Virus record (IMG/VR): IMGVR_UViG_3300047548_001122
Coordinates: 124,001 to 188,000 of that record
Length of the DNA: 64,000 nt
Reading direction: 5' to 3' (one strand)
Within the stretch, counting starts at the first letter, position 1. Every line of letters starts with the position of its first letter. Under the pieces are notes generated by a model. It did no database searches. It saw only the letters and a list, made by a program, of their open reading frames with translations, and was not told the origin of the DNA. A program made the position numbers and the translations under genes. Positions 5,435-50,420 of the stretch are shown here, piece after piece.

Positions 5435-6085
5435 ATGAAATTAATTAGAGAAGCCGTAGAAAATGTAAAGTACATCAGTGAAGCCACAGAAAATGGCAAG
5501 AAAAAACTTTACATTGAAGGTACATTTTTAGTTGGTAATGCTGTTAATAAAAATAACAGAATGTATATGATGGATACTCTCCGTAATGAAGTCGAAAGAT
5601 ATAATCAAGACTTTATATCTCAAAATAGAGCTCTAGGAGAATTAGGCCATCCAGATACACCAACAATAAACTTAGAGAGAGTTAGTCATAAGATCGTTTC
5701 TCTTGTAGAAGATGGCAATACTTTTTATGGTAAAGCTTTGATCTTAGATACTCCTTACGGACAAATAGTAAAAAACTTTATTGAAAACGATGTTACTTGT
5801 GGTGTTTCTTCGAGAGCTTTAGGTTCATTAGTTCAAACCAAAGAAGGTTACAATTTGGTTCAAGATGATCTTAGACTTGCAACGGCAGCTGATATTGTTG
5901 CAGACCCTTCTGCGCCAGGTGCTTTCGTCAACGGTATTATGGAAAATAAAGAGTGGATGTTTGTTGATGGAAAGTTCATGGAAAAACAATTTGATGAAGC
6001 CAAAAAACAGATAAAACAAGCCTCAAGAAAAGATATCGAAAAAGTTGCATTAAAACTATTTGAAAATTATATTAGAAAACTTTAA
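5435..6085 (+). CDS. gp21: Prohead protease
   Basis: NKNNRMY, ALGELGHP, GVSSRALGSL, ADIVADPSAPGAFVNGIME. Confidence 0.97.
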   Translation: MKLIREAVENVKYISEATENGKKKLYIEGTFLVGNAVNKNNRMYMMDTLRNEVERYNQDFISQNRALGELGHPDTPTINLERVSHKIVSLVEDGNTFYGKALILDTPYGQIVKNFIENDVTCGVSSRALGSLVQTKEGYNLVQDDLRLATAADIVADPSAPGAFVNGIMENKEWMFVDGKFMEKQFDEAKKQIKQASRKDIEKVALKLFENYIRKL

Positions 6086-35329: not shown

Positions 35330-35621
35330 GTATTCCATAGATTATAGGGATGAAAATACCTATTTTACCATACTTGATGGTAAATATCAAAACGTCACCG
35401 TAACTTACTCGCAAACCCAATTCTTTGAAGATGAGGGTTTTGCGAGGTTAAAATTCAATTATAATGTCATAGATTCTTCAACATTTGCCTTAGAACAGTT
35501 GACAGACGATCAAGAATTTGTTATAATGTTAGGTGATATCTTACAAGACTACATTCTAGTGAAGGCAAAAAATCTTGAAACAGTTAGAGACAGTAATTCT
35601 GAAGAACTTGATTTTCAATGA
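35265..35621 (+). CDS. Hypothetical protein at the T4 gp40 position
   Basis: Overlaps uvsX end and gp41 start; AAGGA RBS; identity with gp40 not established. Confidence 0.5.
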   Translation: MKLLMEILCKIFPWMKKQQSPKYSIDYRDENTYFTILDGKYQNVTVTYSQTQFFEDEGFARLKFNYNVIDSSTFALEQLTDDQEFVIMLGDILQDYILVKAKNLETVRDSNSEELDFQ

Positions 35622-36981
35622 AGAGTATACCCGTAAAGTATTTCCTTTCATAAAACACGAATATTTTTCAGATAACGTACACAAAAAATTCTTCAATGAA
35701 GTAAAACGTTTTATTGAAGAATATAAAACTCCTCCTACCTACGAATCACTACTCATCGATTTTACCGAATCTAAAAGATTAACACAAACCGAAGTGAACG
35801 GTTGTGTTGATTTGTTGCGTGAACTAAATTCAAATAAGAATGAAAGTTCCGAAATGGAATGGCTGATTGACCAAACAGAAAAGTTTTGTCAAGATAAAGC
35901 AATCTATAATGCAATCATGAATTCGGTCAGTATTCTTGACCAAAGTGGTGAAGATAAGAAATCTAAAGGTGAGATACCTAAACTTCTCAGTGATGCATTG
36001 GCCGTATCTTTTGATAATCATATTGGTCATGATTATGTAAATGATTTTGATGCACGGTATGATTTCTATCACAAACAAGAAACGCGGATTCAATTTGACC
36101 TTGATATCTTTAATAGGATTACCAAAGGTGGTCTTCCAATTAAAACTCTGAATATCGCACTTGCTGGCACAGGCGTTGGTAAATCTTTGTTCATGTGTCA
36201 CGTTGCCGCATCTTGTATATCACAAGGTAAAAATGTTTTGTATATTACACTTGAGATGGCCGAAGAAAAGATTGCAGAACGTATAGATGCTAATCTTTTG
36301 AATGTAGACTTGAATGAGTTATATACTTTGACTAAAGATGATTATGGTCGAAAGTTTAATCACCTGAAAACCAAACTCAATGGTAAATTAATCATCAAAG
36401 AATATCCGACTGCATCGGCATCAACACTTCATTTCAGAGCTTTGTTGAATGAATTGCAATTGAAGAAGAATTTTAAACCTGATATTGTGTTTATCGATTA
36501 TCTGAATATTTGTTCATCATCTCGTATTAAACCTGGTGCGAACGTGAATAGTTATTCTTATATCAAAGCAATTGCAGAAGAACTTCGTGGTCTTGCAGTT
36601 GAATTTGCTGTGCCTGTTGTTTCTGCTACACAGACAACTAGAAGTGGTTTTACAAATACTGATCCTGGTCTAGAAGATACTTCAGAATCTTTTGGTCTGC
36701 CAGCAACAGCAGACTTTATGTTTGCTTTGATTAGTACTGAAGAACTTGAACAGTTGAATCAGATTATGGTGAAACAGTTGAAGAATCGTTACGGTGATCC
36801 AAATCATTTCAAACGATTCGTTGTAGGTATTGATAGAGCTAAGATGAAATTGTATGATGCTGAACCTGATGCACAGAATGATATTTCAGATTCAGGTCAA
36901 CCAAATGATACACCTCCATTAAATACATTTGGTAATCGTGAGAGTAAATTTAACAAAAACTTTGGCGGAATTAAAGTATGA
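35575..36981 (+). CDS. gp41: Replicative DnaB-like helicase (TTG start)
   Basis: AGTGVGKS, ITLEMAEE, IDYLNI, SATQTTR, SESFGLPATAD, QLKNRY. Confidence 0.97.
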   Translation: MKQLETVILKNLIFNEEYTRKVFPFIKHEYFSDNVHKKFFNEVKRFIEEYKTPPTYESLLIDFTESKRLTQTEVNGCVDLLRELNSNKNESSEMEWLIDQTEKFCQDKAIYNAIMNSVSILDQSGEDKKSKGEIPKLLSDALAVSFDNHIGHDYVNDFDARYDFYHKQETRIQFDLDIFNRITKGGLPIKTLNIALAGTGVGKSLFMCHVAASCISQGKNVLYITLEMAEEKIAERIDANLLNVDLNELYTLTKDDYGRKFNHLKTKLNGKLIIKEYPTASASTLHFRALLNELQLKKNFKPDIVFIDYLNICSSSRIKPGANVNSYSYIKAIAEELRGLAVEFAVPVVSATQTTRSGFTNTDPGLEDTSESFGLPATADFMFALISTEELEQLNQIMVKQLKNRYGDPNHFKRFVVGIDRAKMKLYDAEPDAQNDISDSGQPNDTPPLNTFGNRESKFNKNFGGIKV

Positions 36982-38093
36982 GTTTGAATAAAGATCAAGC
37001 AATTTATTGTGCGAATGTATTCTCAAACTATTTCGATAGATTCGAAAGAATAGATGAATACATGCGTGAACAAAAGTTGTCATCTATGTCAGAGAGGTCA
37101 CCAACACTTTTTGGTATGGGACCTGAAGATGATTTGTTTTCAGACTTCACGGTTTCACCAGAAAAAATGAACTTTGAAGTTGTCGAACTTTCGCAAGAAA
37201 AGTGGGACATTTATTTGAATATGATTTCTTCTCATTCAAACATGACAAGTATTCCTGGTCGCTGCTTGAGATTGGCTGTACTAGAAACTACAACCAATAA
37301 ATGGTGTGGTTTTATTAGACTAGGTTCGCCAGTAATTAATTGTAAACCTAGAAATGAAATGTTGGGTCAAGTGTTCACTCAAACTGAAGGTGGCGCACAG
37401 TTATTTAATCGATGCGCTATCATGGGTTTTGTTATTGTACCTGCACAGCCATTTGGTTATAATTACCTTGGTGGTAAATTGATGGCTGCGATTTGTACTA
37501 CACATGAAGTACGTGAAATGTTGAACAAGAAATATAACATGACAACTTGTTTGTTTGAAACAACCAGTTTATACGGTTCAACTAAGGCTGTATCACAATA
37601 TGATGGCATGAAACCTTATATTCGATACAAAGGTTTGACAGATAGTGATTTTCTTCCTATGTTACATGGTAAAACATACACCGATCTAAAAGAATATATG
37701 GAAGAAATTATTGGTGAACCACTCGCACCAGAAGGTGCTTCTAGTCGTAAACTAAAGATATCAAATGCCATGGTGTCACATATCAATACTGCTTTGAAGG
37801 GTACACCAGAAGGTGCCAAGTTTAAAAAGACCATAGAAAATGCAAAGAATCTGAACGAACAAAAGCGTTACTATGTTTCAGATTATGGGTTTAGTAACAT
37901 GGTTGACTTTGTTAATGGAAAAACAACTAAACTGATTGCTGGTGAAAACTATGAAAAGTTTCATTTGAAAAACATAATTGAGTGGTGGAGAAAGAAAGCC
38001 ATTAACAGATTTGAAACGTTAAAGACTGAGAATAGACTTAGGACAGAGATCGAAGTCTGGACAGGCGAAAAAGAGATTGACATTATTCGGTAG
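36978..38093 (+). CDS. DruA/DUF4338-like protein, paralog B
   Basis: PGRCLRLAV..KWCGFIRLGSP, IVPAQPFGYNYLGGKLMA, ETTSLYG..SQYD shared with 17495..18772. Confidence 0.65.
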   Translation: MSLNKDQAIYCANVFSNYFDRFERIDEYMREQKLSSMSERSPTLFGMGPEDDLFSDFTVSPEKMNFEVVELSQEKWDIYLNMISSHSNMTSIPGRCLRLAVLETTTNKWCGFIRLGSPVINCKPRNEMLGQVFTQTEGGAQLFNRCAIMGFVIVPAQPFGYNYLGGKLMAAICTTHEVREMLNKKYNMTTCLFETTSLYGSTKAVSQYDGMKPYIRYKGLTDSDFLPMLHGKTYTDLKEYMEEIIGEPLAPEGASSRKLKISNAMVSHINTALKGTPEGAKFKKTIENAKNLNEQKRYYVSDYGFSNMVDFVNGKTTKLIAGENYEKFHLKNIIEWWRKKAINRFETLKTENRLRTEIEVWTGEKEIDIIR

Positions 38094-38102: not shown

Positions 38103-38127
38103 GATAAATACTCCATTATAAGTGGAG
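38103..38127 (+). promoter_or_regulatory. Late promoter variant plus SD-sequestering hairpin
   Basis: GATAAATA followed by CTCCATT-ATA-AGTGGAG hairpin containing the GGAG RBS. Confidence 0.6.
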
Positions 38128-38133: not shown

Positions 38134-39318
38134 ATGGCAGGCAATGCAATAGAAACCGCGAAACAAGAAAACGGATCAAAAGTTTATTTCGAATTAGTAA
38201 TAGAAAACGGAAAAGACCCGGACAAAGATTTTGCTGTTTTAGCGACAGCTGTAAAAAAAGTATATTCTAATGTAAATAATGAGTGGATGGAATCTTATGC
38301 GAAACAGGCACGAGCCTTGAAAGAATATATTGGTAGAAATAAGGGTTATGAGTACTCCCGTGATGATGGGTTTATGCCATTTATTGAAAACATTGCGAAA
38401 CAAAAATGTGGTGTTTCAGTTAAAGATCGTTGGGACCCTGCTGACATTTACATGGTAAAAAAATCCAAAAGAAAAGAAATTGAAGCCAAAATAAAACAGA
38501 TAACATCCACTCCAGATAAAGATACAAACCTATTGGCATTAAATGATTACATGAGAGAACTGATGCAATCTCTTGATATGTTACCAGTTTCATTAAAAGC
38601 TATTAAAAAATCCACAACAAAGGCTAAAGCTGAACCTGCGAACATAGGAGCTAAAGGTAAAAAAGTTTCTTTTGAAGTTGTTCCAGGTTCAGTAAAATGT
38701 TTATTAGATTTTGGACATAAAACTCCAAACGAATTCGATACGGGTGAATTTGCATTTGATTTTAAAGTTGGTGATGAAGAGATTCACGGACAAGCTCGTA
38801 ACTTTCAGTATTCAAAAGCAAGAAACTTAGTTCAAACGGATTTGACACCAAAAGGTCGGTCTGGTGGTGCAAAACTTGGTAAAGTATCTTCTGAAGCATT
38901 AGATACTTTTTTAAAAAAAATTAATTTGCCAAGACCAGCATCTGCTGCCAAAGATCCAAATATTGATTTGCCTGGTGAATGGAAAAAAGAAAATATTGAT
39001 TATTGGATAAAGTATATAGAAAATCTAAAGAGTGAAAAGATTGCTGGCCGACCTATTGATTTAGGTGGACTGAAAGTAAAAAATGGTAATAAAGAAACTG
39101 TGGGTGCAGAAGAAGTAATCAAAAATGCTATTATATCTGAAAATAAAACAAGAAGTTCTGCTGGTCGTTTTTCATCCAAGTTGATTGGATTAAGATGGGC
39201 TTATACATGGGCTTTAATAGAAAAAAAAGGAAAGATGGATGAATGGTTACAAACTTTATATTATGGTGCTAAAAAAGAATTTGGTGGTAAAAACGGACCA
39301 TTTTTAAAAATATACTAA
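38134..39318 (+). CDS. Putative PD-(D/E)XK-like nuclease
   Basis: KDRWDPADIYMV ... PVSLK pattern. Confidence 0.5.
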   Translation: MAGNAIETAKQENGSKVYFELVIENGKDPDKDFAVLATAVKKVYSNVNNEWMESYAKQARALKEYIGRNKGYEYSRDDGFMPFIENIAKQKCGVSVKDRWDPADIYMVKKSKRKEIEAKIKQITSTPDKDTNLLALNDYMRELMQSLDMLPVSLKAIKKSTTKAKAEPANIGAKGKKVSFEVVPGSVKCLLDFGHKTPNEFDTGEFAFDFKVGDEEIHGQARNFQYSKARNLVQTDLTPKGRSGGAKLGKVSSEALDTFLKKINLPRPASAAKDPNIDLPGEWKKENIDYWIKYIENLKSEKIAGRPIDLGGLKVKNGNKETVGAEEVIKNAIISENKTRSSAGRFSSKLIGLRWAYTWALIEKKGKMDEWLQTLYYGAKKEFGGKNGPFLKIY

Positions 39319-39319
39319 T

Positions 39320-40549
39320 ATGAAATTTTTAGACTTTTTAGTAGAAGCCAAAAATGAAGGCGCAAATCTACACCTAGAACATCTAGAAGATAATATATTT
39401 AATTTTGGTGTAAATGGTACTCGACAATCAATTGATTTTTTAAGATCATTAAGAGATATGTTAGCAGGTCATTCACAATCAAAAGTAAATATTACAACAA
39501 AATGGGATGGAGCTCCAGCTGTTATATGTGGAATAAATCCTGAAAACGGAAAGTTTTTTGTTGGAACAAAATCTGTTTTCAACAAAGATGGTAAATTAAA
39601 TTACACCGATGATGATATTGATAAGAATCATCCTGGTGGGGGATTAAATGAGAAATTAAAAATAGCATTGGCCTTTTTACCAAAACTTGGCATCAAAGGT
39701 ATATTACAAGGTGATTTGTTATTTACCAAAGGTGATATACAATCAGAAACAATTGACGGACAAAAATATATAAAGTTTCAACCAAATACTATTGTGTATG
39801 CGGTGCCAACCGATTCAGTTATGGCTAAAAAAATGTTAGCCTCTCAAATGGGAATAGTTTTTCATACTTCTTATTCAGGAAGAACGATAGATACATTGAA
39901 AGCCTCCTTCAATATTGACATTGGAAATTTAACACAAACTAAAGACGTTTGGTTCCGAGATGCTTCTTTTGTTGATGCGTCTGGTACTGCAACATTCACC
40001 GATAAAGAAACTCAAGCAATAACCTCTCTATTATCTCAAGCAGGTAGAGTTTTTCAAACCATAAATCCTGTCGTGTTAAATAGAATATCCTCTGGAATAT
40101 TTAAAGAACAAATTAAGACATTCAATAATACAAAGATTAGATCAGGACAAAAAATAACAAATACTGGCCAACATGTTTCAGAATTAATTAAATATATTGA
40201 AGATAAACTAAACAAAGAAATACTTGTTGCAAAAAAAGAAGATACAAAGAAGAAAAGAATTGCCGAAAAGAATGAAGTGATGAGGTTCTATAGAGGAAGT
40301 GCCAATCAATTAAAATCTGTTTTTGATTTGATGAACTTAATAGTTGATGCTAAGTTAATGATAATAAGAAAATTGGAATCAATCAAATCTTCAGTAGATA
40401 CCTTTGTTAGAACAGAAGATGGTTATAGAGTTACTGGTCCAGAAGGGTTTGTGGCAGTAGATAGAATAAGTGGTGGTGCATTGAAGTTAGTTGATCGACT
40501 AGAATTTAGTCAGACCAACTTTAATGCCGCAAAAAATTGGAGCAAATAA
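39320..40549 (+). CDS. Polynucleotide ligase-like nucleotidyltransferase (DUF6267-like), putative internal protein
   Basis: TKWDG (motif I), QGDLLF (III), PEGFV (IV), KLV (V); MKFLDFLVE N-terminus. Confidence 0.6.
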   Translation: MKFLDFLVEAKNEGANLHLEHLEDNIFNFGVNGTRQSIDFLRSLRDMLAGHSQSKVNITTKWDGAPAVICGINPENGKFFVGTKSVFNKDGKLNYTDDDIDKNHPGGGLNEKLKIALAFLPKLGIKGILQGDLLFTKGDIQSETIDGQKYIKFQPNTIVYAVPTDSVMAKKMLASQMGIVFHTSYSGRTIDTLKASFNIDIGNLTQTKDVWFRDASFVDASGTATFTDKETQAITSLLSQAGRVFQTINPVVLNRISSGIFKEQIKTFNNTKIRSGQKITNTGQHVSELIKYIEDKLNKEILVAKKEDTKKKRIAEKNEVMRFYRGSANQLKSVFDLMNLIVDAKLMIIRKLESIKSSVDTFVRTEDGYRVTGPEGFVAVDRISGGALKLVDRLEFSQTNFNAAKNWSK

Positions 40550-40822: not shown

Positions 40823-41212
40823 ATGGCATATTCAACTCAAGTATTAGATCATTACGAAAATCCTAGAAACGTAGGTAAATTTGATATAGGTGATGAAAGT
40901 GTTGGCACAGGATTAGTAGGTGCTCCAGCTTGTGGTGACGTTTTGAAATTGCAGATAAAAGTAGAAGATAATATTATCACTGATGCGAAATTTAAAACAT
41001 ATGGTTGCGGTAGTGCTATTGCTTCGTCATCATTAGTAACTGAATGGGTCAAAGGAAAAACACTTGAAGAAGCGGGTGCAATTAAGAACACTGAAATTGC
41101 AGAAGAGTTAGCTCTACCACCAGTAAAGATACATTGTTCAATCTTAGCTGAAGATGCTATTAAAGCAGCAATCAAAGACTATCAAGATAAAAACTTAACA
41201 AAGGCTGCATAA
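40823..41212 (+). CDS. iscU: Fe-S cluster scaffold IscU
   Basis: DHYENPRNVG, GAPACGDV, FKTYGCGSAIASSS, LPPVKIHCS (three Cys + His). Confidence 0.97.
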   Translation: MAYSTQVLDHYENPRNVGKFDIGDESVGTGLVGAPACGDVLKLQIKVEDNIITDAKFKTYGCGSAIASSSLVTEWVKGKTLEEAGAIKNTEIAEELALPPVKIHCSILAEDAIKAAIKDYQDKNLTKAA

Positions 41213-41484
41213 TGTTAAAACAAATAAATGGTCGTTGGGCTTTAGTTTCGAAAAAAACTCAAAGACCTCTTGCCTATTATAAAGGCGAAGGTAAACCATC
41301 GGATGAGTGGGTAAAGAAGCAAGAAGCAAGAATTCAGATGTTCAAATCTATGAATGAACAACAAGAATTTGTTTCAAAGGCAGGCGCAGGAGAATGGGGT
41401 AGACCCGAAACCACAAGAAAATATATAGAAGATACACCAGGACAAAAAGTTCAAAGATTTAAGAAATATATAAAGAATATATAA
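41212..41484 (+). CDS. Hypothetical basic protein
   Basis: TAATG coupled to iscU. Confidence 0.55.
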   Translation: MLKQINGRWALVSKKTQRPLAYYKGEGKPSDEWVKKQEARIQMFKSMNEQQEFVSKAGAGEWGRPETTRKYIEDTPGQKVQRFKKYIKNI

Positions 41485-41503
41485 TTATTTTATGGAGTAG
41501 AGA

Positions 41504-42337
41504 ATGAAAGATTTGATTATAGGATGTTCCACCAACTACGATTGGTCTAAGTTAAAATATTGGATCAATTCTATCAATGCATCAGGATTTGAAGGTGATA
41601 AAATCCTGATTCTAATGAACTGTGATGCTGAAACAGTTAAAAAAATTACAGAAGCAGGTTTCGGTGTAATTGGATTCAATCAAGATGAACAAGGTAATTT
41701 GAGTTATAGTTCTTCAATGCCTGTCCACACCGAAAGATTTTTACACATCTACAATTATTTAAAAGACAGAGACTATCGTTATGTAATCACAACCGATGTT
41801 AAAGATGTTGTCTTTCAAAAAAATCCTATCGAATATCTTGAAGCGGAATGTATTTCTAAAAATCTAATTTTTGCTTCCGAAAGTATCAAGTATAAAGACG
41901 AACCTTGGGGTGACCAAAACCTAAAAGAAACTTTTGGTCCATACATCTACGAACAGTTTAAGAACAATGAAATCTTCAACGTTGGTGTTTTGGCTGGTCA
42001 CGGCTACGCTATTCGTGATTTAGCTTTGAACATTTTTGTCGCTAGTTTAAATCGTCCTATTCCAATTTGTGACCAATCTACGTTTAATTTCCTCATTAGT
42101 CAAAACCCTTACACCTCATTGAGTAAGTATTGTTTCTCTGAAGATGGTTGGGCTGCACAACTAGGAACAACAGGTGATCCATCAAAATCTGCACAATTCG
42201 ATCCTTTGTTACTCGAAGAGAAACCAAAATTTGATGGTAATATTGTAACTACATCAAAAGGTAAAGAATTCTATATTGTACACCAATATGATAGAGTTCC
42301 AGAAATGAAAAAGGTCATTGAGGAAAAATTTGCATGA
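41504..42337 (+). CDS. GT-A-like glycosyltransferase
   Basis: YVITTDVKDVVFQ (DxxD), FNVGVLAG, DQSTFN, HQYDR. Confidence 0.6.
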   Translation: MKDLIIGCSTNYDWSKLKYWINSINASGFEGDKILILMNCDAETVKKITEAGFGVIGFNQDEQGNLSYSSSMPVHTERFLHIYNYLKDRDYRYVITTDVKDVVFQKNPIEYLEAECISKNLIFASESIKYKDEPWGDQNLKETFGPYIYEQFKNNEIFNVGVLAGHGYAIRDLALNIFVASLNRPIPICDQSTFNFLISQNPYTSLSKYCFSEDGWAAQLGTTGDPSKSAQFDPLLLEEKPKFDGNIVTTSKGKEFYIVHQYDRVPEMKKVIEEKFA

Positions 42338-43290
42338 AACGTCTATTGTTTGTAGTTCATCGTTATGCTCCTTATCCTGGCGGTTCTGAAAATTATGTCA
42401 GAGATATGGCCGAAGAATGTGTTCGGAGAGGACATGATGTTTCTGTTTTCACTGGCGAACACAAAGGCGATTTGAATGGAGTAAAAGTTACATCAGACGT
42501 AAATATTCTAGGTCAAAAGTTTGATCTCATTATCGTTCATGGCGGCGACGTTGGCTTACAAAATTTAGTATTGATGAACGCAGAAAGAATACCTTCACCA
42601 ATACTATTCATGATTATAAAACCATCCGAAAGTCCTGTTTATATTCATGCGATGAACACCGTAAAATACCTAGGATGTTCTGCACCAGAGGATTATGAAT
42701 TATTGAAAAAACATAATCACATGAATAAGTGTGTTAGAGTTATTCATGGTATAGATGAAAAGATATCAGTTGGTATGACAGGTTTTAGAGAGAAGTATGG
42801 TATAGAAACAAAATATATGTTTTTATCGTGTGGAGGTTTCTGGCCAAATAAAGCAATGAATGAACTCGCACAAATATTCAATGATATTGGAAGAGATGAT
42901 GCTACGCTAGTATTAACAGGTTATGATAACAGACATAACATTCGTCCAATTGATACGAAATATGTTAAGACATTTATGATAGAAGATAGAGAAGATGTTT
43001 TGTCGGCCATTCGTGATGCAGATTTATACATTATGCATTCCTTCAGTGAAGGGTTTGGTTTAGTTCTTCTAGAGTCTATGTTAAATAAAACTCCTTGGGC
43101 TTCTAGAAAAATTGCTGGTGCTAATTTAATGAGTGAGTTTGGATTTACATACGAAAATGACCATCAACTTAGAGAATATATTTTAGATTTTGATGGTAAT
43201 AAAGATGCACAAATAGAAAATGCATATGAGTATGTAACATTAAATCATATGATAAAAAATACAGTTGATGATATTATGAGGTTAGTATGA
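42334..43290 (+). CDS. GT4 (GT-B) glycosyltransferase
   Basis: YPGGSE, ADLYIMHSFSEGFGLVLLESM (EX7E). Confidence 0.85.
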   Translation: MKRLLFVVHRYAPYPGGSENYVRDMAEECVRRGHDVSVFTGEHKGDLNGVKVTSDVNILGQKFDLIIVHGGDVGLQNLVLMNAERIPSPILFMIIKPSESPVYIHAMNTVKYLGCSAPEDYELLKKHNHMNKCVRVIHGIDEKISVGMTGFREKYGIETKYMFLSCGGFWPNKAMNELAQIFNDIGRDDATLVLTGYDNRHNIRPIDTKYVKTFMIEDREDVLSAIRDADLYIMHSFSEGFGLVLLESMLNKTPWASRKIAGANLMSEFGFTYENDHQLREYILDFDGNKDAQIENAYEYVTLNHMIKNTVDDIMRLV

Positions 43291-43922
43291 ATTTTACTTT
43301 TGGTATTCTTACAAAATACGATGATGAAGAAAAACTAAAAGAAGTTATAGACTCGATACACAATCTAAACATTCCGGAAAATGGTGGTGATTATCAAGTT
43401 TTGGTAATAGGCGAAAAGAAAGTAGAAGGATCAAAATATGAGAGGTACATTTATTTTGATGAAACTGCCAAACCAGCCTGGATAACCAAAAAGAAAAATT
43501 TATTGGCTCGTGCCGCAAATTTTCAAAACATTGTTTTAATGCACGATTACTTTGTTTTTGATAAAGATTGGTATAAAAACTTTTTAGAGTTTGGAAATGA
43601 TTGGGACATTTGTTCTTGTCCACAATATCTAATAAACGGTAAACGACATTTTACCGATTGGGTTTGTTGGGATTCACCTTTATTTCCGAGATATACTTCA
43701 TTACATTATGATGATTGGTCACATGTGAATTACATGTATCAATCTGGCGGTTTCGTTGTTGCAAAAACACAGTTGATTATTGATAATCCATTCAATGAAC
43801 AATTAGGTTGGGGTCAAGCTGACGATGTTGAATGGTCTCTCCGAGTGAGACATAGATACAAGTATGTTTGTAATGGAAAAAGTATAGTGAGACATAATAA
43901 GGTACATCGTGATGCGAAATAA
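43287..43922 (+). CDS. GT-A-like glycosyltransferase
   Basis: ITKKKN..A, IVLMHDY, WGQADDVEWS. Confidence 0.65.
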   Translation: MNFTFGILTKYDDEEKLKEVIDSIHNLNIPENGGDYQVLVIGEKKVEGSKYERYIYFDETAKPAWITKKKNLLARAANFQNIVLMHDYFVFDKDWYKNFLEFGNDWDICSCPQYLINGKRHFTDWVCWDSPLFPRYTSLHYDDWSHVNYMYQSGGFVVAKTQLIIDNPFNEQLGWGQADDVEWSLRVRHRYKYVCNGKSIVRHNKVHRDAK

Positions 43923-45282
43923 ATTAATTATATTTGACTTAGATGGTGTTTTGATTGAATCTAGAGAATTGCATTATCACGCTCTTAATGATGCATTAAG
44001 AAAAGTCGATGAACGTTATGTAATTGACCGAGAAGAACACCTCAGTGTTTATGATGGTTTAAACACCACTAGAAAACTTGAAATGTTGACCGAAAGAAAA
44101 GGTCTGCCTACGAGTTTCTACGATCAAGTATGGCAAGATAAACAGTCAGCAACTTTTGAATTAATCAAACAGTTTCCAAAAAATCCAACCTTAATAGAAT
44201 TTTTCAGTAGTCTAAAATCGCAAGGTATAAAAGTTGCCGTTGCAAGTAACTCTATACGTGAAACGGTAAAGCTTGCTTTAATATCTATAGGTGTGTTAGA
44301 ATATGTAGATTACTTTGTAAGTAATGAGGATGTTAGGAGACCCAAGCCATATCCAGAGATGTATTGGCAATGCATGACCGTTTTAAATGCATTGCCAAAA
44401 ACTACAGTTATCTTTGAAGATAGTCACATTGGTAGAGAGGGTGCTTTAAATTCTGGAGCTCACTTAATTCCATTAAAAGATTCTTTTGATTTGACCAAAG
44501 ACAAAATAGACGATGCGCTTGATATATTAAATGGAATTAAAAAAACAAATATACCATGGAGAAATAAAAAAATGAATGTATTGATACCAATGGCAGGCGC
44601 AGGTAGTAGATTTGCTGCAGCAGGTTATACTTTTCCAAAACCTCTAATCGAAGTTCGTGGAAAACCAATGATTCAGGTTGTTGTGGAAAATCTTAATGTT
44701 GAAGCGCACTTCATTTTCATTGTACAAAAAGAACACTACGAAAAGTATAATCTAAAACAATTGTTGAATCTTATTGCTCCAGGTTGCGACATAATCCAGG
44801 TTGACGGTATAACAGAAGGTGCTGCGTGTACAACATTACTCGCAAAAGAACTTATTAATAACGGTGAACCTCTATTGATGGCAAACTCGGATCAATTTGT
44901 TGAGTGGAATTCCAATGAGTGTTTATATGCATTTACTGCTGATACTATCGATGGTGGTATAGTTACTTTTGAAGCCACGCATCCAAAGTGGTCTTTTGCT
45001 AAATTGGATGAAAATGGTTTTGTTTCAGAAGTTGCGGAGAAAAAACCAATCTCGAATATTGCAACGGTAGGAATATATTATTGGAAACAAGGTAGCGATT
45101 ATGTTAAGTATGCTGAACAGATGATACAGAAAAACATTCGTGTCAATAATGAATTCTATGTTTGTCCAGTATTTAATGAAGCAATTGCCGATGGTAAAAA
45201 GATAAGAACCAAACATATCGAAAGAATGTGGGGAATAGGAACACCAGAAGATTTAAATTACTTTTTGGAGAACCATAAATGA
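43909..45282 (+). CDS. HAD phosphatase fused to sugar nucleotidyltransferase
   Basis: FDLDGVL, VASNS, KPYPE, FEDS; then IPMAGAGSRF...PKPLI, ANSDQ, GTPEDL. Confidence 0.88.
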   Translation: MMRNKLIIFDLDGVLIESRELHYHALNDALRKVDERYVIDREEHLSVYDGLNTTRKLEMLTERKGLPTSFYDQVWQDKQSATFELIKQFPKNPTLIEFFSSLKSQGIKVAVASNSIRETVKLALISIGVLEYVDYFVSNEDVRRPKPYPEMYWQCMTVLNALPKTTVIFEDSHIGREGALNSGAHLIPLKDSFDLTKDKIDDALDILNGIKKTNIPWRNKKMNVLIPMAGAGSRFAAAGYTFPKPLIEVRGKPMIQVVVENLNVEAHFIFIVQKEHYEKYNLKQLLNLIAPGCDIIQVDGITEGAACTTLLAKELINNGEPLLMANSDQFVEWNSNECLYAFTADTIDGGIVTFEATHPKWSFAKLDENGFVSEVAEKKPISNIATVGIYYWKQGSDYVKYAEQMIQKNIRVNNEFYVCPVFNEAIADGKKIRTKHIERMWGIGTPEDLNYFLENHK

Positions 45283-46671: not shown

Positions 46672-47126
46672 TTTCACATAGAGCTAATTTAAACGGTCCA
46701 GACCCATCAATCGAAAATAAACCTGAATCAATTGTTCACGCTATCGATCAGGGATTTTCGGTTGAGGTTGATCTTCGAATGAAAGATCAAAAACTATATT
46801 TTGGACATGATGAAGCTCAATATGAAACTGATATTAATTTTTTAAAGAAGTACAAACAATATCTATGGATTCATTGTAAAGAAATGGAAACCATGGAGTT
46901 TTGTCTTGAACAGGCTCTACACTGTTTCTGGCATAACGATGATGATTATACACTGACAAATTACAGATATGTCTGGGCATACCCCGGAAAAGAACCTGTC
47001 GGCAAACTAACGATAATGGTGATGCCAGAAAGGCACTGGAGTCCAGAAGAAACCCTATCAAAAAAACCATTTGGAGTATGCACAGACTACCCTTATGCGT
47101 ATCAAGATATTATAAATAAGAGATAA
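46662..47126 (+). CDS. PLC/GDPD-like phosphodiesterase
   Basis: ISHRAN..G, EN, VEVDL, FGHD, WIHCK, GVCTDY. Confidence 0.7.
   Translation: MFIISHRANLNGPDPSIENKPESIVHAIDQGFSVEVDLRMKDQKLYFGHDEAQYETDINFLKKYKQYLWIHCKEMETMEFCLEQALHCFWHNDDDYTLTNYRYVWAYPGKEPVGKLTIMVMPERHWSPEETLSKKPFGVCTDYPYAYQDIINKR
47111..47118 (+). promoter_or_regulatory. Late promoter TATAAATA for the internal-protein cluster
   Basis: Exact consensus 34 nt upstream of ATG 47152. Confidence 0.8.
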
Positions 47127-47151: not shown

Positions 47152-49896
47152 ATGAAATTTAAAGACTTTCTAACAGAAAAGAAAGAAGTACATGCCGTAA
47201 TGGCCTTTGGGAGAATGAATCCCATAACTTCTGGCCACGAAAAATTAGTCAACGCTGTCAAAAAAGTTGCTGCCAAAGTTGGCGGTTCACATATTATCGC
47301 ACTATCACATTCTCAAGACCCAAAGAAAAATCCTCTCACAGCCGCACAAAAAGTCAAATACGCCAAAGGTGCATTTCCTGGCACAAATTTTGTTGCTGCA
47401 TCTAAAGACGCACCTACATTCTTTGAACACGCCGAAAAACTATACAAACAAGGTGTAACACATTTACATATGATTGGTGGTTCTGATCGCGTAGAAGAAT
47501 ATAACAAATTACTTCACAAATATAATGGCACACATAAAGGTGCTCGTTTCAATTTTAAAACCATCGAAGTACATTCTGCTGGTGAACGTGATCCTGATGC
47601 AGATGGCGTCGAAGGAATTTCTGCAAGTAAGATGCGTGAGGCAGCAAGTAAAGGAGACTTTAATACTTTTAAGAAAGGTGCTCCGTCAACAATGTCAGTC
47701 GATCTAATGAAACAAATGTATAAAGATGTACGCAAAGGTATGAACCTTAAAGAAAGTATTAATGAAGAATTTGAAGAACTTTTGATTGAAGGTGTTCACG
47801 ACAAAGGTATTTTTAAAGCTGTATTTTTAGCAGGTGGTCCAGGTTCAGGTAAAGATTATGTATTGAGTAATACACTTGATGGTCATGGTTTAACTGAAAT
47901 CAATTCTGATAAGGCTTTAGAATTTTTAATGGACAAAAAAGGTCTCGATAAAAGAATGCCTGCAAGTGAAACGGAAGCTAGAGATAAAGTTAGAGCTAAA
48001 GCAAAAAATGTTACAGAGCTTCGTCAAAGACTTGCATTACAAGGAAGAAATGGACTAATCATTAATGGTACTGGTGATGATGTTGAAAAAGTAACAAGAA
48101 TCAAATCTAAGTTGGAAGAATTAGGTTACGACACTTCAATGATTTTAGTGAATACGAATGATGAAGTATCTGCTCAAAGAAATATTGAACGTGGTCAAAG
48201 AGGTGGTCGCACAGTACCAGAAACCATTCGTAAAGAAAAATGGGACAATGTTCAAAATGCTCGTACTGAATATGCAAAACTTTTTTCTAATAATTATATG
48301 GAGTTTGATAACTCCGAAGATTTGAGACAAGCTCCTCCTGATGTTGTTAAAAGTAAAAAAATGGAGATGATGCAACTGTTTAAAAACGTACAACAGTTTG
48401 TTGCACAACCTCCTCAATCACCTGCTGCACAAGAGTGGGTAGCAAATGAATTAGAACAAAAAGATACTCTTAAACCACCAAAAAATGGTGTTGAACAAGT
48501 TGTACCACATGGTTCGAGTGCAGCAGAAGAAGCCAGAAAATTAGGATTACAATATTATGGTTTCGGTAGATATGGTAAAAACGGAAAAACTACACACCGT
48601 TCCATTCATGATAAACTTGTACAAGTTACTGATAAAAAACCAGAACAACCTAAACTACCTACACCTGGTTCTTCACCAATTTCAAACAAAAAAAATGTTT
48701 CAGAAGAAATTAATATTGATGAAGAATTTAACGAAATGCTTGATTCTTTAGATGAAGATTTACGTAAATGGTTTGACCCAAAACATCCAGAAGGTGGTTG
48801 GAAAAGAATTAACTCTAAAGGTGAAGCTATAGGTCCTTGCGCTCGTGAACCAGGTGAACCAAAACCAAAATGCATGTCAAACGAAAAGAGAGCTAAGTTG
48901 AGTAAACAAGAAAGAGCTTCTGCTGTTGCTGCAAAACGCAAACATGATCCTATTGCAGATAGATCGGGTAAAGGTGGTAAACCAGTAAACGTTTCCAATT
49001 TTGGAAAAGGTAAATTGTCTGAATCTGTAACAGTTTCAATTACTGGTGATACTGTTGATGAAGTTAAAGATTTCTTCAACACAATGGGATCAAATTTAAA
49101 TACAACTACAGAACAATATGCATTATCAGATTCCAAAAAAGAATTGATAACTCTGGGTAAATTTACTCAACCATTTGGTGAGAAAATGGAAAATACCACC
49201 ATTACAAATGATATGGTTGAAAATATGCTTGAACAGAAAGAACCTAATTTACTCAAAGACAAGAGTGGTAAAGTTAGGGTATTCATGTTAAGATCGGTAG
49301 CGGCTAAAGAAGCTCATACAAGTCAAGGTACAGTTTTAAAGTATAAAAACGGTTATGTCGTTAAACTAAAAGAGGAGATTGAAGATGTTGAAGTTTATAA
49401 AGGAACTATTCGGAATTGGATTGAAGAATCCAGAAAAACATGGATTGGAGGGAGCAACCAGAGCACCCAACGAGGACTTCTCACAGAGAGTGGAACAATA
49501 TCAAACGGAAGTTCCGAAGGTAGAGGAACCGAAAGTAGAAGAATTGAAAGTGGAGAAACCAAAGAAGAAACAACCATCCAAGAAGCCTGCGAAAATAACT
49601 CCACAACCGCAACCAAAAAAATCACCCTCGCAGAAATCAAACAGAGGCAGAAAGCCAAACACCAAAAACAAATCGACGAAATAGATCGAGGTATTGAACC
49701 TGGCATATCAATGGCTGGTGCTGGCGAAGGCATCGGCCGTGATATGGGTGAAAAAATTAAAAAAAGGTCACATAAAGTTACTGTTGTTGAATTAACTGGT
49801 GATGAAACAACAGCATCTATTGGTGACCAAAAAGAAGATGAGTTAAAGAAAAAAGGTATCTCACTAACTACATTTAAAAAGAGAAACTACATATGA
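47152..49896 (+). CDS. Modular putative internal head protein: HIGH nucleotidyltransferase + Zeta/AAA_33-like P-loop kinase + small modules
   Basis: MKFKDFLTE; FGRMNPITSGH; LIE|GVHDKG..AGGPGSGKD..GGRTVPE; EEINIDEE and SLDE|DLRKWF linkers. Confidence 0.7.
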   Translation: MKFKDFLTEKKEVHAVMAFGRMNPITSGHEKLVNAVKKVAAKVGGSHIIALSHSQDPKKNPLTAAQKVKYAKGAFPGTNFVAASKDAPTFFEHAEKLYKQGVTHLHMIGGSDRVEEYNKLLHKYNGTHKGARFNFKTIEVHSAGERDPDADGVEGISASKMREAASKGDFNTFKKGAPSTMSVDLMKQMYKDVRKGMNLKESINEEFEELLIEGVHDKGIFKAVFLAGGPGSGKDYVLSNTLDGHGLTEINSDKALEFLMDKKGLDKRMPASETEARDKVRAKAKNVTELRQRLALQGRNGLIINGTGDDVEKVTRIKSKLEELGYDTSMILVNTNDEVSAQRNIERGQRGGRTVPETIRKEKWDNVQNARTEYAKLFSNNYMEFDNSEDLRQAPPDVVKSKKMEMMQLFKNVQQFVAQPPQSPAAQEWVANELEQKDTLKPPKNGVEQVVPHGSSAAEEARKLGLQYYGFGRYGKNGKTTHRSIHDKLVQVTDKKPEQPKLPTPGSSPISNKKNVSEEINIDEEFNEMLDSLDEDLRKWFDPKHPEGGWKRINSKGEAIGPCAREPGEPKPKCMSNEKRAKLSKQERASAVAAKRKHDPIADRSGKGGKPVNVSNFGKGKLSESVTVSITGDTVDEVKDFFNTMGSNLNTTTEQYALSDSKKELITLGKFTQPFGEKMENTTITNDMVENMLEQKEPNLLKDKSGKVRVFMLRSVAAKEAHTSQGTVLKYKNGYVVKLKEEIEDVEVYKGTIRNWIEESRKTWIGGSNQSTQRGLLTESGTISNGSSEGRGTESRRIESGETKEETTIQEACENNSTTATKKITLAEIKQRQKAKHQKQIDEIDRGIEPGISMAGAGEGIGRDMGEKIKKRSHKVTVVELTGDETTASIGDQKEDELKKKGISLTTFKKRNYI
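49385..49684 (+). CDS. Nested out-of-frame gene, small Lys/Pro-rich protein
   Basis: GAGGAG 7 nt before ATG; MLKFIKELFGIG amphipathic start and KKQPSKKPAK tail; wholly inside 47152..49896. Confidence 0.55.
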   Translation: MLKFIKELFGIGLKNPEKHGLEGATRAPNEDFSQRVEQYQTEVPKVEEPKVEELKVEKPKKKQPSKKPAKITPQPQPKKSPSQKSNRGRKPNTKNKSTK

Positions 49897-50420
49897 AGTC
49901 ATTTACTCAATTCATAAACGAAGAAGTTGAAATTCTGGATGAAATGCCTGGTGCCAATATGGACACCAGAGCGGTTCATCAACATCTGAAAAAACAAGGA
50001 TGGAAATTAACCAGAAGTTCTGGCAATCATGATGTGTTTACTCATCCAGATGCTAAACATCACATTCCCGTTCCTCGTCACAAACAATTGAAAGCTCCTT
50101 TAGTTCGTGGTATCTTAAAACAAGCTAAAGTAAATGAAGAAGTTGAATTGGATGAAACTGCTGCATGGCAACGTAAAGAAGGTAAAAATCCTGAAGGTGG
50201 ATTAAACCGTAAAGGTATCGAATCGTATCGCCGTGAAAATCCTGGTTCTAAACTATCGATGGCTGTAACTACTCCTCCATCAAAACTAAAACCAGGTTCA
50301 AAGGCTGCAAAGAGAAGAAAATCCTTTTGTGCAAGAATGGGTGGTATGCCTGGTCCAATGAAGGATGAAAAAGGTCGTCCAACAAGAAAAGCATTATCTT
50401 TGCGTAAATGGAACTGCTAA
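49893..50420 (+). CDS. Putative internal protein: HicA-like RNase module + C-terminal basic module
   Basis: MKSFTQFINE; HLKKQGWKLTRSSGNHDVFTHP..IPVPRH..LVRGILKQA; EEVELDE linker; RRKSFCARM. Confidence 0.75.
   Translation: MKSFTQFINEEVEILDEMPGANMDTRAVHQHLKKQGWKLTRSSGNHDVFTHPDAKHHIPVPRHKQLKAPLVRGILKQAKVNEEVELDETAAWQRKEGKNPEGGLNRKGIESYRRENPGSKLSMAVTTPPSKLKPGSKAAKRRKSFCARMGGMPGPMKDEKGRPTRKALSLRKWNC

What the first reader, a model, noticed from the sequence alone, without database searches (positions are those of the whole stretch)
39320..40549. Ligase-like enzyme with a capsid-targeting-type N-terminus
Seen: KxDG, GD, EG and K motifs in ligase order, and an MKFLDFLVE start resembling the T4 internal-protein targeting peptide MKTYQEFIAE, which gp21 removes after Glu (established). 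Inference: a virion-packaged, injected RNA/DNA ligase, perhaps paired with the upstream nuclease or with the kinase in 47152 as a ready-made tRNA repair kit analogous to T4 Pnk/Rnl1.
Basis: partly seen in the sequence, partly recalled or inferred. Interest (0 to 1): 0.65.

Follow-up and report, generated by a model that had tools for sequence, protein, structure and literature searches.

The report
Capsid-targeted ligase-like phage enzyme
A gene of a marine T4-like phage encodes a very divergent relative of RNA/DNA ligases that carries the same kind of short N-terminal tag T4 uses to load proteins into its capsid, so the phage probably injects this enzyme together with its DNA.

Summary
Both halves of the observation hold. 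ORF 39320-40549 (+, 409 aa) is a full-length member of Pfam DUF6267, a very abundant, uncharacterised family of marine T4-like phages.

**Ligase-like fold.** The AlphaFold model is confident (pLDDT 92.5). In a second look at Foldseek's 1000 best PDB chains, 49 of the 50 best entries are polynucleotide ligases, with RNA ligases on top (NgrRnl Z 9.1). The near-invariant residues sit in ligase motif order: K61-W-D-G, Q-G-D132, E375-G, K389. There is no OB domain, a 126-residue basic helical insert, and no sequence-profile similarity to known ligases.

**N-terminal tag.** The first nine residues are a conserved leader:
- It is present in 63 of 110 diverse family representatives.
- A matrix built from those leaders scores the T4 IPII/IPIII capsid-targeting sequences at 14-15 bits.
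- The same matrix picks the known gp21 site of T4 gp23.
- In this phage's whole proteome it singles out three N-termini: this protein, the 914-aa cytidylyltransferase-kinase (47152), and a HicA-like RNase (49893).
- Leader-bearing cytidylyltransferase homologues are found in virions of two cyanophages, while their leaderless DUF6267 homologues are not.

Packaging of the ligase itself, its adenylylation and its substrate remain inferred. The "upstream nuclease" is not supported. The link to the kinase rests on gene fusions.

The parts
38103..38110 (+). T4-type late-promoter core (GATAAATA), 31 nt upstream of the two-gene unit 38134 + 39320
   Evidence: NATAAATA occurs 10 times on the + strand of the window. 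Six of these lie 28-41 nt upstream of a start codon, including the scaffold gene and the gene at 47152.
38134..39318 (+).
   Evidence: No Pfam hit. The model has pLDDT 88 but no fold match: best VIA Z 3.7, Foldseek nothing. Language-model neighbours RE_HpaII 0.88 and RE_HaeIII 0.86 are leads only. The Melnitz homologue has a canonical leader. A distant homologue, S-SCSM1 ORF90, is annotated as a virion protein.
39320..40549 (+). DUF6267 protein: divergent ligase-like (covalent nucleotidyltransferase fold) enzyme with an N-terminal leader
   Evidence: PF19782 at E 1.6e-113 over residues 16-405. AF2 pLDDT 92.5, pTM 0.89. Ligases dominate the structural matches.
39320..39346 (+). Leader MKFLDFLVE (residues 1-9), predicted capsid-targeting sequence cleaved after Glu9
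   Evidence: Matrix score 18.6 bits. Same pattern as the T4 IPII/IPIII targeting sequence. Low-confidence helix in the model, pLDDT about 52.
39365..39391 (+). Conserved His box (N-L-H-L-E-H-L-E-D; H18 and H21 near-invariant) at the start of the mature protein
   Evidence: Leaderless family members begin just before this box.
39500..39517 (+). Motif I, K61-W-D-G-A-P (predicted nucleotidyl-accepting lysine)
   Evidence: K61, D63, G64 and P66 are at least 90% conserved. The motif lies in a loop between strands 56-61 and 67-72.
39701..39721 (+). Motif III-like strand, I-L-Q-G-D132-L-L
   Evidence: Q130, G131 and D132 are at least 90% conserved.
39776..39799 (+). Motif IIIa-like segment (F153 ... 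Y160)
   Evidence: F153, P155, N156 and T157 are at least 90% conserved; Y160 is invariant.
40001..40378 (+). 126-residue helical insert between motifs IIIa and IV, net charge about +10
   Evidence: Helices 228-353 in the model. 24 K/R against 14 D/E. The insert is much shorter in the 295-aa cyanophage forms.
40442..40459 (+). Motif IV, E375-G-F-V-A-V
   Evidence: E375 at least 90% conserved, G376 invariant. This is the only stretch that hhalign pairs with T4 Rnl1 (its E-G-Y-V-A-V), and that pairing is not significant.
40478..40498 (+). Motif V, A-L-K389-L-V-D-R393
   Evidence: K389, L390, D392 and R393 are at least 90% conserved. It lies 14 residues after motif IV, the same spacing as the residue numbers in the NgrRnl mutant entry titles suggest (E312, K326).
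47111..47118 (+). Late-promoter core TATAAATA, 41 nt upstream of the gene at 47152
47152..49896 (+). 914-aa partner protein: leader MKFKDFLTE, HIGH-type (NMNAT-like) nucleotidyltransferase, Zeta/AAA_33 P-loop kinase and a long tail
   Evidence: Pfam and PHROG hits. Matrix score 20.5 bits. Homologous to virion-detected S-CREM2 gp154 and gp160 and to S-SCSM1 ORF91.
49893..50420 (+). 175-aa protein with leader MKSFTQFINE, a HicA_toxin domain and DUF6321; probable co-packaged RNase
   Evidence: Matrix score 15.5 bits. PF07927 E 3.9e-13 and PF19846 E 3.3e-23.
5435..6085 (+). gp21-type prohead protease, the enzyme predicted to remove the leader
   Evidence: phrog_207 head maturation protease, E 1.4e-72.

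Best explanation
The gene encodes a highly divergent member of the lysine-nucleotidyl transferase (ATP-dependent polynucleotide ligase) superfamily. It is closest in shape to RNA ligases and has no OB domain.

Proposed course of events:
1. It is transcribed late, together with the gene at 38134.
2. Its 9-residue N-terminal leader acts like the T4 capsid-targeting sequence and takes the protein into the scaffolding core of the prohead.
3. The gp21-type protease then cuts after Glu9 (L-V-E|A), leaving the mature enzyme, which starts at A-K-N, inside the head.
4. It is ejected with the DNA, so a nucleic-acid end-joining activity is present from the first moment of infection.
5. K61 would be adenylylated, AMP passed to a 5'-phosphate end, and the break sealed. 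The basic helical insert would hold the nucleic acid.

It most likely works with other leader-bearing cargo of the same phage: the NMNAT-like nucleotidyltransferase/P-loop kinase protein at 47152 and the HicA-like RNase at 49893. That points to RNA ends rather than DNA nicks as substrate.

Shown: the fold, motif conservation, leader conservation and its match to the T4 signals, late-promoter motifs, domain fusions, and virion detection of leader-bearing partner homologues. Inferred: packaging of this protein, cleavage, adenylylation and substrate.
For: **Family.** PF19782 at E 1.6e-113. There are 2753 clusters at 50% identity with E <= 1e-3.

**Fold.**
- AF2 pLDDT 92.5.
- All-against-all VIA search of 48,161 chains: ranks 1-8 are all ligases. 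These are NgrRnl Z 8.7 (185 residues aligned), Trl1 7.9 and 7.7, T4 Rnl2 7.6, Rnl3 7.2, a putative Aquifex DNA ligase 6.8, a second Rnl3 6.7 and a third Trl1 domain 6.6.
- In the second look, 49 of 50 entries are ligases, best Z 9.1.
- RNA ligases score 7-9 and DNA ligases 5.6-6.5.

**Motifs.** They are near-invariant and in the canonical order.

**No other ligase.** This complete genome has no PF01068, PF09414, PF01653 or PF09511. The first two are also absent from four related phages, whereas T4 has both and lacks DUF6267.

**Leader.**
- Conservation is shown.
- T4 IPII/IPIII score 14.9/14.4 bits.
- The P4-P2' half of the matrix ranks Glu65 of T4 gp23 first. That is the end of its 65-residue propeptide (PMC5694885).
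- The same half finds Q-L-T-E|A in this phage's own capsid protein.
- The conserved positions correspond to T4 targeting-sequence residues 4 and 7 (targeting) and 8 and 10 (processing) (PMC9026906).
- Protease and scaffold genes are present.

**Late-promoter motifs.**

**Virion data.** S-CREM2 gp154 (leader, 17.1 bits) and S-SCSM1 ORF91 (leader, 21.2 bits) are virion proteins. The leaderless DUF6267 homologues of both phages are not listed as virion proteins.

**Fusions.** DUF6267 is found fused with CTP_transf_like and with AAA_33/Zeta kinase.
Against: - No experiment shows DUF6267 in a virion. The only proteomes I could check concern leaderless forms, which says nothing directly about the leader-bearing form.
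- The association of leader with virion detection is 2 of 3 strong-leader ORFs, which is not significant on its own.
- Sequence-profile comparison with Rnl2 and Rnl1 finds no homology. HMMER against PDB sequences finds none either, and Foldseek gives no hit at E <= 1e-3. The ligase assignment therefore rests on Z of about 9 plus the motifs.
- Motif III has Asp where ligases have Glu, and motif V has one lysine instead of two.
- A HIGH-type nucleotidyltransferase has no role in classical RNA repair, and no 3'-phosphatase was found.
- S-PM2 has a leaderless DUF6267 behind a late-promoter motif, so late expression does not require the leader.
Confidence: 0.5

Rival explanations
1. The enzyme is the phage's replacement for the missing DNA ligase. 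It would seal nicks and Okazaki fragments in the cytoplasm. The leader would be irrelevant to that job, or would only add a small packaged pool.
For: No other ligase of any known family is present in this complete genome or in four relatives, while T4 has gp30 and lacks DUF6267. The gene sits just behind DNA polymerase, UvsX and the gp41 helicase in this phage and its relatives. The leaderless forms in S-CREM2 and S-SCSM1 lie outside late units and are not in virions, so the activity is evidently useful inside the cell.
Against: There is a late-promoter motif and no early or middle signal in front of the unit. The leader is conserved under selection. There is no OB domain, which every cellular and viral ATP-dependent DNA ligase has. 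RNA ligases outscore DNA ligases structurally. The fusion partners are a kinase and a HIGH-type nucleotidyltransferase rather than replication proteins.
Confidence: 0.2
2. The protein keeps the ligase fold but does not join polynucleotides. It would transfer a nucleotide to a protein or a small molecule, working with the NMNAT-like nucleotidyltransferase and kinase in nucleotide or NAD+-related chemistry, for instance to blunt NAD+-depleting host defences on entry.
For: The fusion and neighbourhood partners are a HIGH-type (NMNAT-like) nucleotidyltransferase and a small-molecule-type Zeta/AAA_33 kinase. Published work reads the virion-borne homologue as NMNAT (PMC9602691, PMC10665884). Motifs III and V deviate from ligase norms.
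Against: The basic helical insert suggests nucleic-acid binding. All close structural neighbours are polynucleotide ligases. The match to the nadR NMNAT model is far below its cut-off (13 bits against 341). No member of this fold is known to me to make NAD+ (own knowledge).
Confidence: 0.15
3. The leader is not a capsid-targeting signal. It would be a conserved N-terminal helix with another role (folding, partner binding, translation initiation context), and the protein would not be packaged.
For: There is no direct virion evidence for DUF6267. S-SCSM1 ORF30 has a strong leader (16.4 bits) and is not annotated as a virion protein. HTVC008M has only a short, weak version.
Against: The leader matches the experimentally defined T4 targeting sequence and the gp23 cleavage site position by position. 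It appears on unrelated proteins of the same phage. Family members without it start exactly at the predicted mature end. Two leader-bearing homologues of the partner protein are in virions.
Confidence: 0.15

Closest known systems
Nick-sealing RNA ligases of the Rnl5 type (Naegleria gruberi NgrRnl / Deinococcus DraRnl) and T4 Rnl2 / trypanosome REL1
   Same: These are the best structural matches to the adenylyltransferase domain: Z 9.1, 8.2 and 7.6, with 180-197 residues aligned. They share motif I K-x-D-G, an acidic motif III, motif IV E-G and a motif V lysine 14 residues later. None of them has an OB domain.
   Different: There is no detectable sequence or profile similarity. DUF6267 has a 126-residue basic helical insert between motifs IIIa and IV instead of an N- or C-terminal accessory domain. 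Motif III has Asp, motif V has a single lysine followed by D-R, and there is a conserved N-terminal His box.
T4 internal proteins IPI/IPII/IPIII and Alt: capsid-targeting sequence cargo cleaved by gp21
   Same: Both have a 9-10-residue N-terminal peptide with an aromatic, an aromatic, an aliphatic and a Glu at matching spacing. Both have a small or charged residue after the Glu. In both, the peptide occurs on several unrelated proteins of one phage, and a gp21-type protease and scaffold are encoded (PMC9026906, PMC5694885).
   Different: The cargo here is a set of large enzymes (ligase-like, nucleotidyltransferase-kinase, HicA-like RNase) rather than small basic anti-restriction proteins or an ADP-ribosyltransferase. 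Packaging and cleavage have not been shown for this protein.
T4 Pnk + Rnl1 tRNA repair, bacterial Pnkp and fungal Trl1 (kinase-ligase healing-and-sealing enzymes)
   Same: A ligase-fold enzyme is linked by fusion and neighbourhood to a P-loop kinase of the same Pfam family (AAA_33) as the T4 Pnk kinase domain. The Trl1 LIG and Pnkp ligase domains are among the structural matches.
   Different: No 3'-phosphatase or cyclic phosphodiesterase domain was found. The kinase scores better with Zeta_toxin than with AAA_33, and aligns with T4 Pnk only at E 0.3. A HIGH-type nucleotidyltransferase is an additional partner. The T4 enzymes are made after infection, not packaged (own knowledge).
Virion-associated 'cytidylyltransferase/NMNAT' of T4-like cyanophages (S-CREM2 gp154, S-SCSM1 ORF91)
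   Same: These are homologous to the N-terminal domain of the window's 914-aa protein. [quoted passage not shown]
   Different: They are a different protein from the one in the finding. The papers did not note the leader or link it to the T4 targeting sequence.

Membership tests
Pfam DUF6267 (PF19782) | Full-length match to the family profile above the gathering score | tested here: met
   380.3 bits against a cut-off of 27; residues 16-405 cover profile positions 1-376.
Covalent nucleotidyltransferase superfamily (ATP-dependent DNA/RNA ligases, capping enzymes) | Adenylyltransferase (NTase) domain fold | tested here: met
   The model has pLDDT 92.5. Ranks 1-8 of 48,161 chains are ligases, Z 6.6-8.7. 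49 of 50 entries in the second look are ligases, best Z 9.1, rmsd 3.6 A over 186 residues. Z is moderate, so the fold call leans on the uniformity of the hits.
Covalent nucleotidyltransferase superfamily (ATP-dependent DNA/RNA ligases, capping enzymes) | Motif I K-x-D-G with an invariant lysine in a loop between two strands | tested here: met
   K61, D63 and G64 are at least 90% conserved in 110 sequences. Strands 56-61 and 67-72 flank the motif.
Covalent nucleotidyltransferase superfamily (ATP-dependent DNA/RNA ligases, capping enzymes) | Motifs III, IIIa, IV and V in order, with acidic III, E-G in IV and lysines in V | tested here: inconclusive
   The order and the IV-V spacing fit (Q-G-D132; F153/Y160; E375-G; K389). 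However, III has Asp rather than Glu, and V has one lysine followed by D392-R393.
Covalent nucleotidyltransferase superfamily (ATP-dependent DNA/RNA ligases, capping enzymes) | Detectable sequence or profile homology to a known member | tested here: not met
   phmmer and hmmsearch against PDB sequences found no ligase. hhalign probability against T4 Rnl2, T4 Rnl1 and an Rnl2 family profile is below 1%.
Covalent nucleotidyltransferase superfamily (ATP-dependent DNA/RNA ligases, capping enzymes) | Formation of a covalent lysyl-NMP intermediate | not testable with these tools
   Needs labelling with alpha-32P nucleotide and a K61 mutant.
ATP-dependent DNA ligases and mRNA capping enzymes | C-terminal OB domain with motif VI | tested here: not met
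   The protein ends 16 residues after motif V, with one short helix. PF01068 does not match anywhere in the genome.
Rnl1 (PF09511) and Rnl2/Rnl5-type (PF09414) RNA ligase families | Match to the family profile | tested here: not met
   No match in the whole genome at E <= 1. It resembles these enzymes in shape but is not a member by sequence.
T4-type capsid-targeting sequence cargo | N-terminal 10-20-residue propeptide with the T4 IPIII determinants (residues 4 and 7 for targeting, 8 and 10 for processing) | tested here: met
   F3, F6, L7 and E9 correspond to Y4, F7, I8 and E10 of T4, with the same spacing. A matrix built from the family leaders scores T4 IPII/IPIII at 14.9/14.4 bits. The determinants come from PMC9026906.
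T4-type capsid-targeting sequence cargo | Phage encodes a gp21-type prohead protease and scaffold, and its capsid protein has the same type of cleavage site | tested here: met
   phrog_207 at E 1.4e-72 and phrog_237 at E 4.2e-83. The best internal site of the phage's own capsid protein is Q-L-T-E|A at Glu55, and the same scoring picks Glu65 in T4 gp23.
T4-type capsid-targeting sequence cargo | Protein present in virions with the propeptide removed | not testable with these tools
   There is only indirect support. Leader-bearing homologues of the partner protein are in virions of S-CREM2 and S-SCSM1, and the leaderless DUF6267 homologues are not.
T4 Pnk/Rnl1-type RNA healing-and-sealing system | 5'-kinase plus 3'-phosphatase plus ligase acting on broken tRNA | tested here: inconclusive
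   A kinase of the AAA_33/Zeta type is present and is fused to DUF6267 in other phages. No HAD or other phosphatase domain was found in the partner proteins. The substrate is untested.

The most novel reading that the evidence does not exclude
Marine T4-like phages (Kyanoviridae and relatives) use a T4-type capsid-targeting leader to load a whole RNA-directed enzyme kit into the head: a previously unrecognised ligase family (DUF6267), an NMNAT-like nucleotidyltransferase/kinase and a HicA-like RNase. All of it would be injected with the DNA. The phage could then cut host RNA and repair or remodel RNA ends before any phage gene is expressed. DUF6267 would be a new, abundant class of RNA ligase with an inserted helical nucleic-acid-binding domain.
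Probability: 0.25. Interest if true: 0.85.

Novelty: new variant of a known kind. Interest (0 to 1): 0.72.

Why it matters
DUF6267 is one of the most widespread uncharacterised proteins of ocean T4-like phages. It has thousands of clusters and is a near-core gene of cyanomyoviruses and of SAR11 and OM43 myophages. Three consequences follow from giving it a ligase fold:
- These phages, which lack every known ligase family, gain a candidate end-joining enzyme.
- It suggests a new ligase architecture that could be useful as a reagent.
- The leader offers a simple sequence rule for predicting which proteins these phages inject.

That rule explains the repeated but puzzling detection of 'cytidylyltransferase/NMNAT' in cyanophage virions. 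It also turns the question of what marine phages deliver besides DNA into something testable by N-terminal proteomics.

Tried and rejected
**Searches on the DUF6267 protein that gave nothing**
- Foldseek against the PDB gave no match at E <= 1e-3. DNA ligases were the only rows with probability around 0.4.
- phmmer and a family profile against PDB sequences gave only low-complexity matches to the helical insert.
- hhalign of the family alignment against T4 Rnl2, T4 Rnl1 and a 13-sequence Rnl2 family alignment gave no significant alignment.
- The ESM Atlas shape search and feature search returned only DUF6267 clusters or unnamed viral clusters.
- NCBIfam returned nothing meaningful.
- No paper in the library contains 'DUF6267'. 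None links a capsid-targeting sequence to cyanophage cargo.

**Upstream gene as nuclease: rejected as unsupported**
-.

**Kinase as T4 Pnk homologue**
- Only generic P-loop similarity was found (BLASTP E 0.3).

**Leader versus virion statistics**
- Two of three strong-leader ORFs in two proteomes were detected in virions. This is too few to count as a test.

**Steps not run**
- Complex prediction was not used. A 9-residue leader against scaffold or protease would be a low-power test, and no stable complex is claimed.
- The read-mapping tools were not used.
Full report
**Setting.** The window is bases 124001-188000 of a complete 214,237-bp virus record with terminal repeats. Gene content and best matches place it among marine T4-like myoviruses. 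The target protein is 49% identical to that of Methylophilales phage Melnitz, 43% to Pelagibacter phage HTVC008M and about 40% to cyanomyoviruses. The window holds the T4-type head module: portal, gp21-type protease at 5435-6085, scaffold and major capsid protein. It also holds the replication module, which ends with the gp41-type helicase at 35575-36981.

**The observation.**
- The ORF is exactly 39320-40549 (+), 409 aa. It is a full-length member of Pfam DUF6267 (E 1.6e-113) and of phrog_455.
- The family is very large. There are at least 8000 clusters at 90% identity among the word-search candidates and 2753 clusters at 50% identity with E <= 1e-3.
- I aligned the query with 109 representatives that are 37-59% identical to it.

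**Is it ligase-like?**
- Sequence methods say nothing. There is no PDB relative by phmmer or by a family profile, and no significant hhalign match to T4 Rnl2, T4 Rnl1 or an Rnl2 family profile. The only stretch hhalign pairs with Rnl1 is motif IV to V, and that pairing is not significant.
- Structure says yes. The AlphaFold model built on this alignment is confident (pLDDT 92.5, pTM 0.89). Foldseek finds nothing at E <= 1e-3.
- The exhaustive VIA search of 48,161 chains puts only ligases at ranks 1-8: Naegleria RNA ligase Z 8.7, fungal Trl1 ligase domains 7.9, 7.7 and 6.6, T4 Rnl2 7.6, archaeal Rnl3 7.2 and 6.7, and a putative Aquifex DNA ligase 6.8.
- In the second look at Foldseek's best 1000 chains, 49 of the 50 listed entries are polynucleotide ligases. 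RNA ligases score 7-9.1 and DNA ligases 5.6-6.5.
- The aligned part of the Naegleria enzyme is its adenylyltransferase domain (residues 140-339). The titles of its mutant entries name K170, D172, E227, E312 and K326. The E312-K326 spacing of 14 equals the E375-K389 spacing here.
- The Z values are moderate, and the tool warns that Z 7-8 is common. The call therefore rests on the uniformity of the hits together with the conserved motifs.
- Differences from known ligases are real. There is a 126-residue, net basic helical insert between motifs IIIa and IV. Motif III has Asp, motif V has one lysine, there is no OB domain, and an N-terminal His box is conserved.
- I therefore file the protein as 'works like, and has the fold of, an RNA-type ligase', not as a member of any named ligase family.

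**No other ligase in the phage.** The complete genome has no match to the ATP-dependent DNA ligase, NAD-dependent ligase, Rnl2-type or Rnl1-type families. S-CREM2, S-PM2, HTVC008M and Melnitz also lack the first and third while having DUF6267. T4 has both and lacks DUF6267. Five phages against one is a small sample, but the pattern is complementary.

**The leader.**
- In 63 of 110 diverse family representatives the protein starts with M..F..[FY][LI].E, a few residues before the conserved His box. About a dozen start directly at that box, which is where a processed protein would begin.
- Among relatives at least 75% identical, F3, [FY]6, L7 and E9 never change while the positions between them do.
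- According to the review of Mullaney and Black's work, residues 4 and 7 of the T4 IPIII targeting sequence matter for targeting, and residues 8 and 10 for processing (PMC9026906). Those are Y, F, I and E in T4. They line up with F3, F6, L7 and E9 here.
- I built a 10-column matrix from 62 leaders of other family members. It scores T4 IPII and IPIII at 14.9 and 14.4 bits and T4 gp24 at 10.1.
- Its P4-P2' half ranks Glu65 first among all Glu residues of T4 gp23. That is the end of the 65-residue gp23 propeptide (PMC5694885).
- In this phage's own capsid protein the same half finds Q-L-T-E|A at Glu55.

**Other leader-bearing proteins.**
- Across all 65,503 ten-residue windows of this phage's ORFs only six reach 11 bits. 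Three of them are at residues 2-3 of ORFs 47152 (20.5), 39320 (18.6) and 49893 (15.5), all within 11 kb.
- Weaker versions sit on two head-module proteins, at 3802 and 4614.
- In Melnitz the homologues of 38134 and 39320, and a 131-aa protein at Melnitz 21306-21701 of untested relationship, carry the leader.

**Expression signals.** The T4-type late-promoter core NATAAATA occurs ten times on the + strand of the window. Six copies lie 28-41 nt upstream of a start codon: before the tail-tube gene, before the scaffold gene, at 38103 before the 38134-39320 unit, at 47111 before the gene at 47152, and before two others. The same motif precedes Melnitz orf15, S-CREM2 gp154, S-SCSM1 ORF89-92 and the leaderless DUF6267 of S-PM2.

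**Virion evidence from the literature.**
- S-CREM2: 52 proteins were found in purified virions, among them the cytidylyltransferase gp154 (PMC10665884).
  - gp154 is homologous to the N-terminal domain of the window's 914-aa protein.
  - It is the only ORF in that genome with a strong leader, at 17.1 bits.
  - The DUF6267 homologue gp87 is leaderless, has no late motif and is not in the virion list.
- S-SCSM1: the NMNAT-like ORF91 is a virion protein (PMC9602691) and has the best leader seen, at 21.2 bits.
  - ORF90, a distant homologue of the window's 38134 protein, is also annotated as a virion protein.
  - The leaderless DUF6267 homologue ORF257 is not so annotated.
  - A second strong-leader ORF of S-SCSM1 (ORF30, 106 aa) is not annotated as a virion protein, although both its neighbours are.
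- These data fit the rule 'leader means packaged' but are too few to prove it. None concerns a leader-bearing DUF6267.

**Partners and likely role.**
- DUF6267 occurs fused to a cytidylyltransferase-like domain on either side, and to an AAA_33/Zeta-type kinase. One Atlas cluster of 57 viral proteins and the PHROG profile carry the DUF6267-cytidylyltransferase fusion.
- In this phage both of those domains are in the 914-aa protein at 47152. It is separated from the ligase gene by a 6.6-kb island of IscU-like and sugar-modifying genes.
- The T4 Pnk kinase domain belongs to the same Pfam family, AAA_33. Direct similarity is only generic (E 0.3), and there is no phosphatase domain.
- The next gene, 49893, combines the leader with a HicA toxin (RNase) domain and DUF6321.
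- A ligase-fold enzyme, a P-loop kinase and an RNase all carry the same leader. That makes an RNA-directed injected kit the reading I favour. DNA nick sealing or nucleotide transfer to another acceptor are live alternatives.

**The upstream gene.** The 38134 protein gave a good model (pLDDT 88) with no fold match. The best VIA Z is 3.7; restriction enzymes and Cas4-type nucleases appear only at Z about 3; Foldseek finds nothing. Language-model neighbours with HpaII- or HaeIII-type families score below the tool's own reliability line. 'Nuclease' is not supported.

**Verdict.**

| Claim | My estimate |
|---|---|
| Fold belongs to the ligase superfamily | 0.85 |
| Leader is a gp21-cleaved capsid-targeting signal | 0.7 |
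| This protein is actually packaged and injected | 0.6 |
| It is adenylylated at K61 | 0.65 |
| Substrate is RNA | 0.4 |

None of this is in the literature I could search.

Noticed in passing
window 49893-50420 (+): A 175-aa protein whose N-terminus (MKSFTQFINE) is the closest match in the genome to the T4 IPII/IPIII targeting sequence. It carries a HicA toxin (mRNA interferase) domain and DUF6321. It lies in the late unit behind 47152 and in front of a 'virion structural protein' (phrog_1645). It may be an injected RNase.
   Followed up: partly
window 3802-4617 (+) and 4614-5060 (+): Two head-module proteins between the portal and the protease start with leader-like peptides (MKSLNEF...LVE|E and MKLINLILE|G). 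The first has no family match at all and looks like an internal-protein analogue. The second matches a 'prohead' PHROG.
   Followed up: partly
window 36978-38093 (+): A 371-aa protein directly after the gp41-type helicase matches the Druantia defence protein DruA (PF14236, E 7e-10) and phrog_19197 (E 3.9e-141). This is a defence-system domain in a phage replication module.
   Followed up: no
window 38134-39318 (+): The gene co-transcribed with the ligase-like gene has a confident model (pLDDT 88, pTM 0.65) but no recognisable fold in the PDB. Its N-terminus M-A-G-N-A-I-E-T-A-K is conserved in close relatives. A distant homologue (S-SCSM1 ORF90) is annotated as a virion protein.
   Followed up: partly
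window 40823-47126 (+): A 6.3-kb island lies between the ligase-like gene and its partner gene. It holds an IscU-type Fe-S scaffold protein (40823-41212) and a row of glycosyltransferase and sugar-nucleotide-type ORFs. In HTVC008M, Melnitz and S-PM2 the two genes are next to, or close to, each other.
   Followed up: no
window 47152-49896 (+), residues 537-607: A segment of the long tail of the 914-aa protein is 44% identical to S-CREM2 gp160, another protein detected in virions. The tail may be built from cargo modules that are separate genes in other phages.
   Followed up: partly
window 671, 6089, 8630, 38103, 47111, 54556 (+): NATAAATA late-promoter cores lie at a fixed 28-41 nt upstream of start codons. 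The exact TATAAATA occurs only 4 times in 64 kb (7.7 expected by chance), all on the + strand. Three of the four lie 30-41 nt in front of a start codon; the fourth (28103) is 275 nt from the next start.
   Followed up: yes
window 7214-8554 (+), residue 55: The predicted maturation site of the major capsid protein is Q-L-T-E|A-T-P-T. The equivalent T4 gp23 site is F-L-T-E|A-E at Glu65.
   Followed up: partly
L001 (S-PM2, NC_006820) 3989-5768: In this reference record the DUF6267 gene is split into two frames: profile positions 1-157 and 156-376 are in different ORFs. The second part is annotated together with the cytidyltransferase. The other S-PM2 record (LN828717) gives one uninterrupted match. 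This is probably a frameshift or sequencing difference.
   Followed up: no
L012 1891-2778 (S-CREM2 gp87) and L077 1407-2291 (S-SCSM1 ORF257): A short form of DUF6267 (about 295 aa) exists with most of the helical insert missing, no leader and no late-promoter motif. It lies in a different part of the genome from the partner gene. The family therefore has a packaged-type and a non-packaged-type version.
   Followed up: partly
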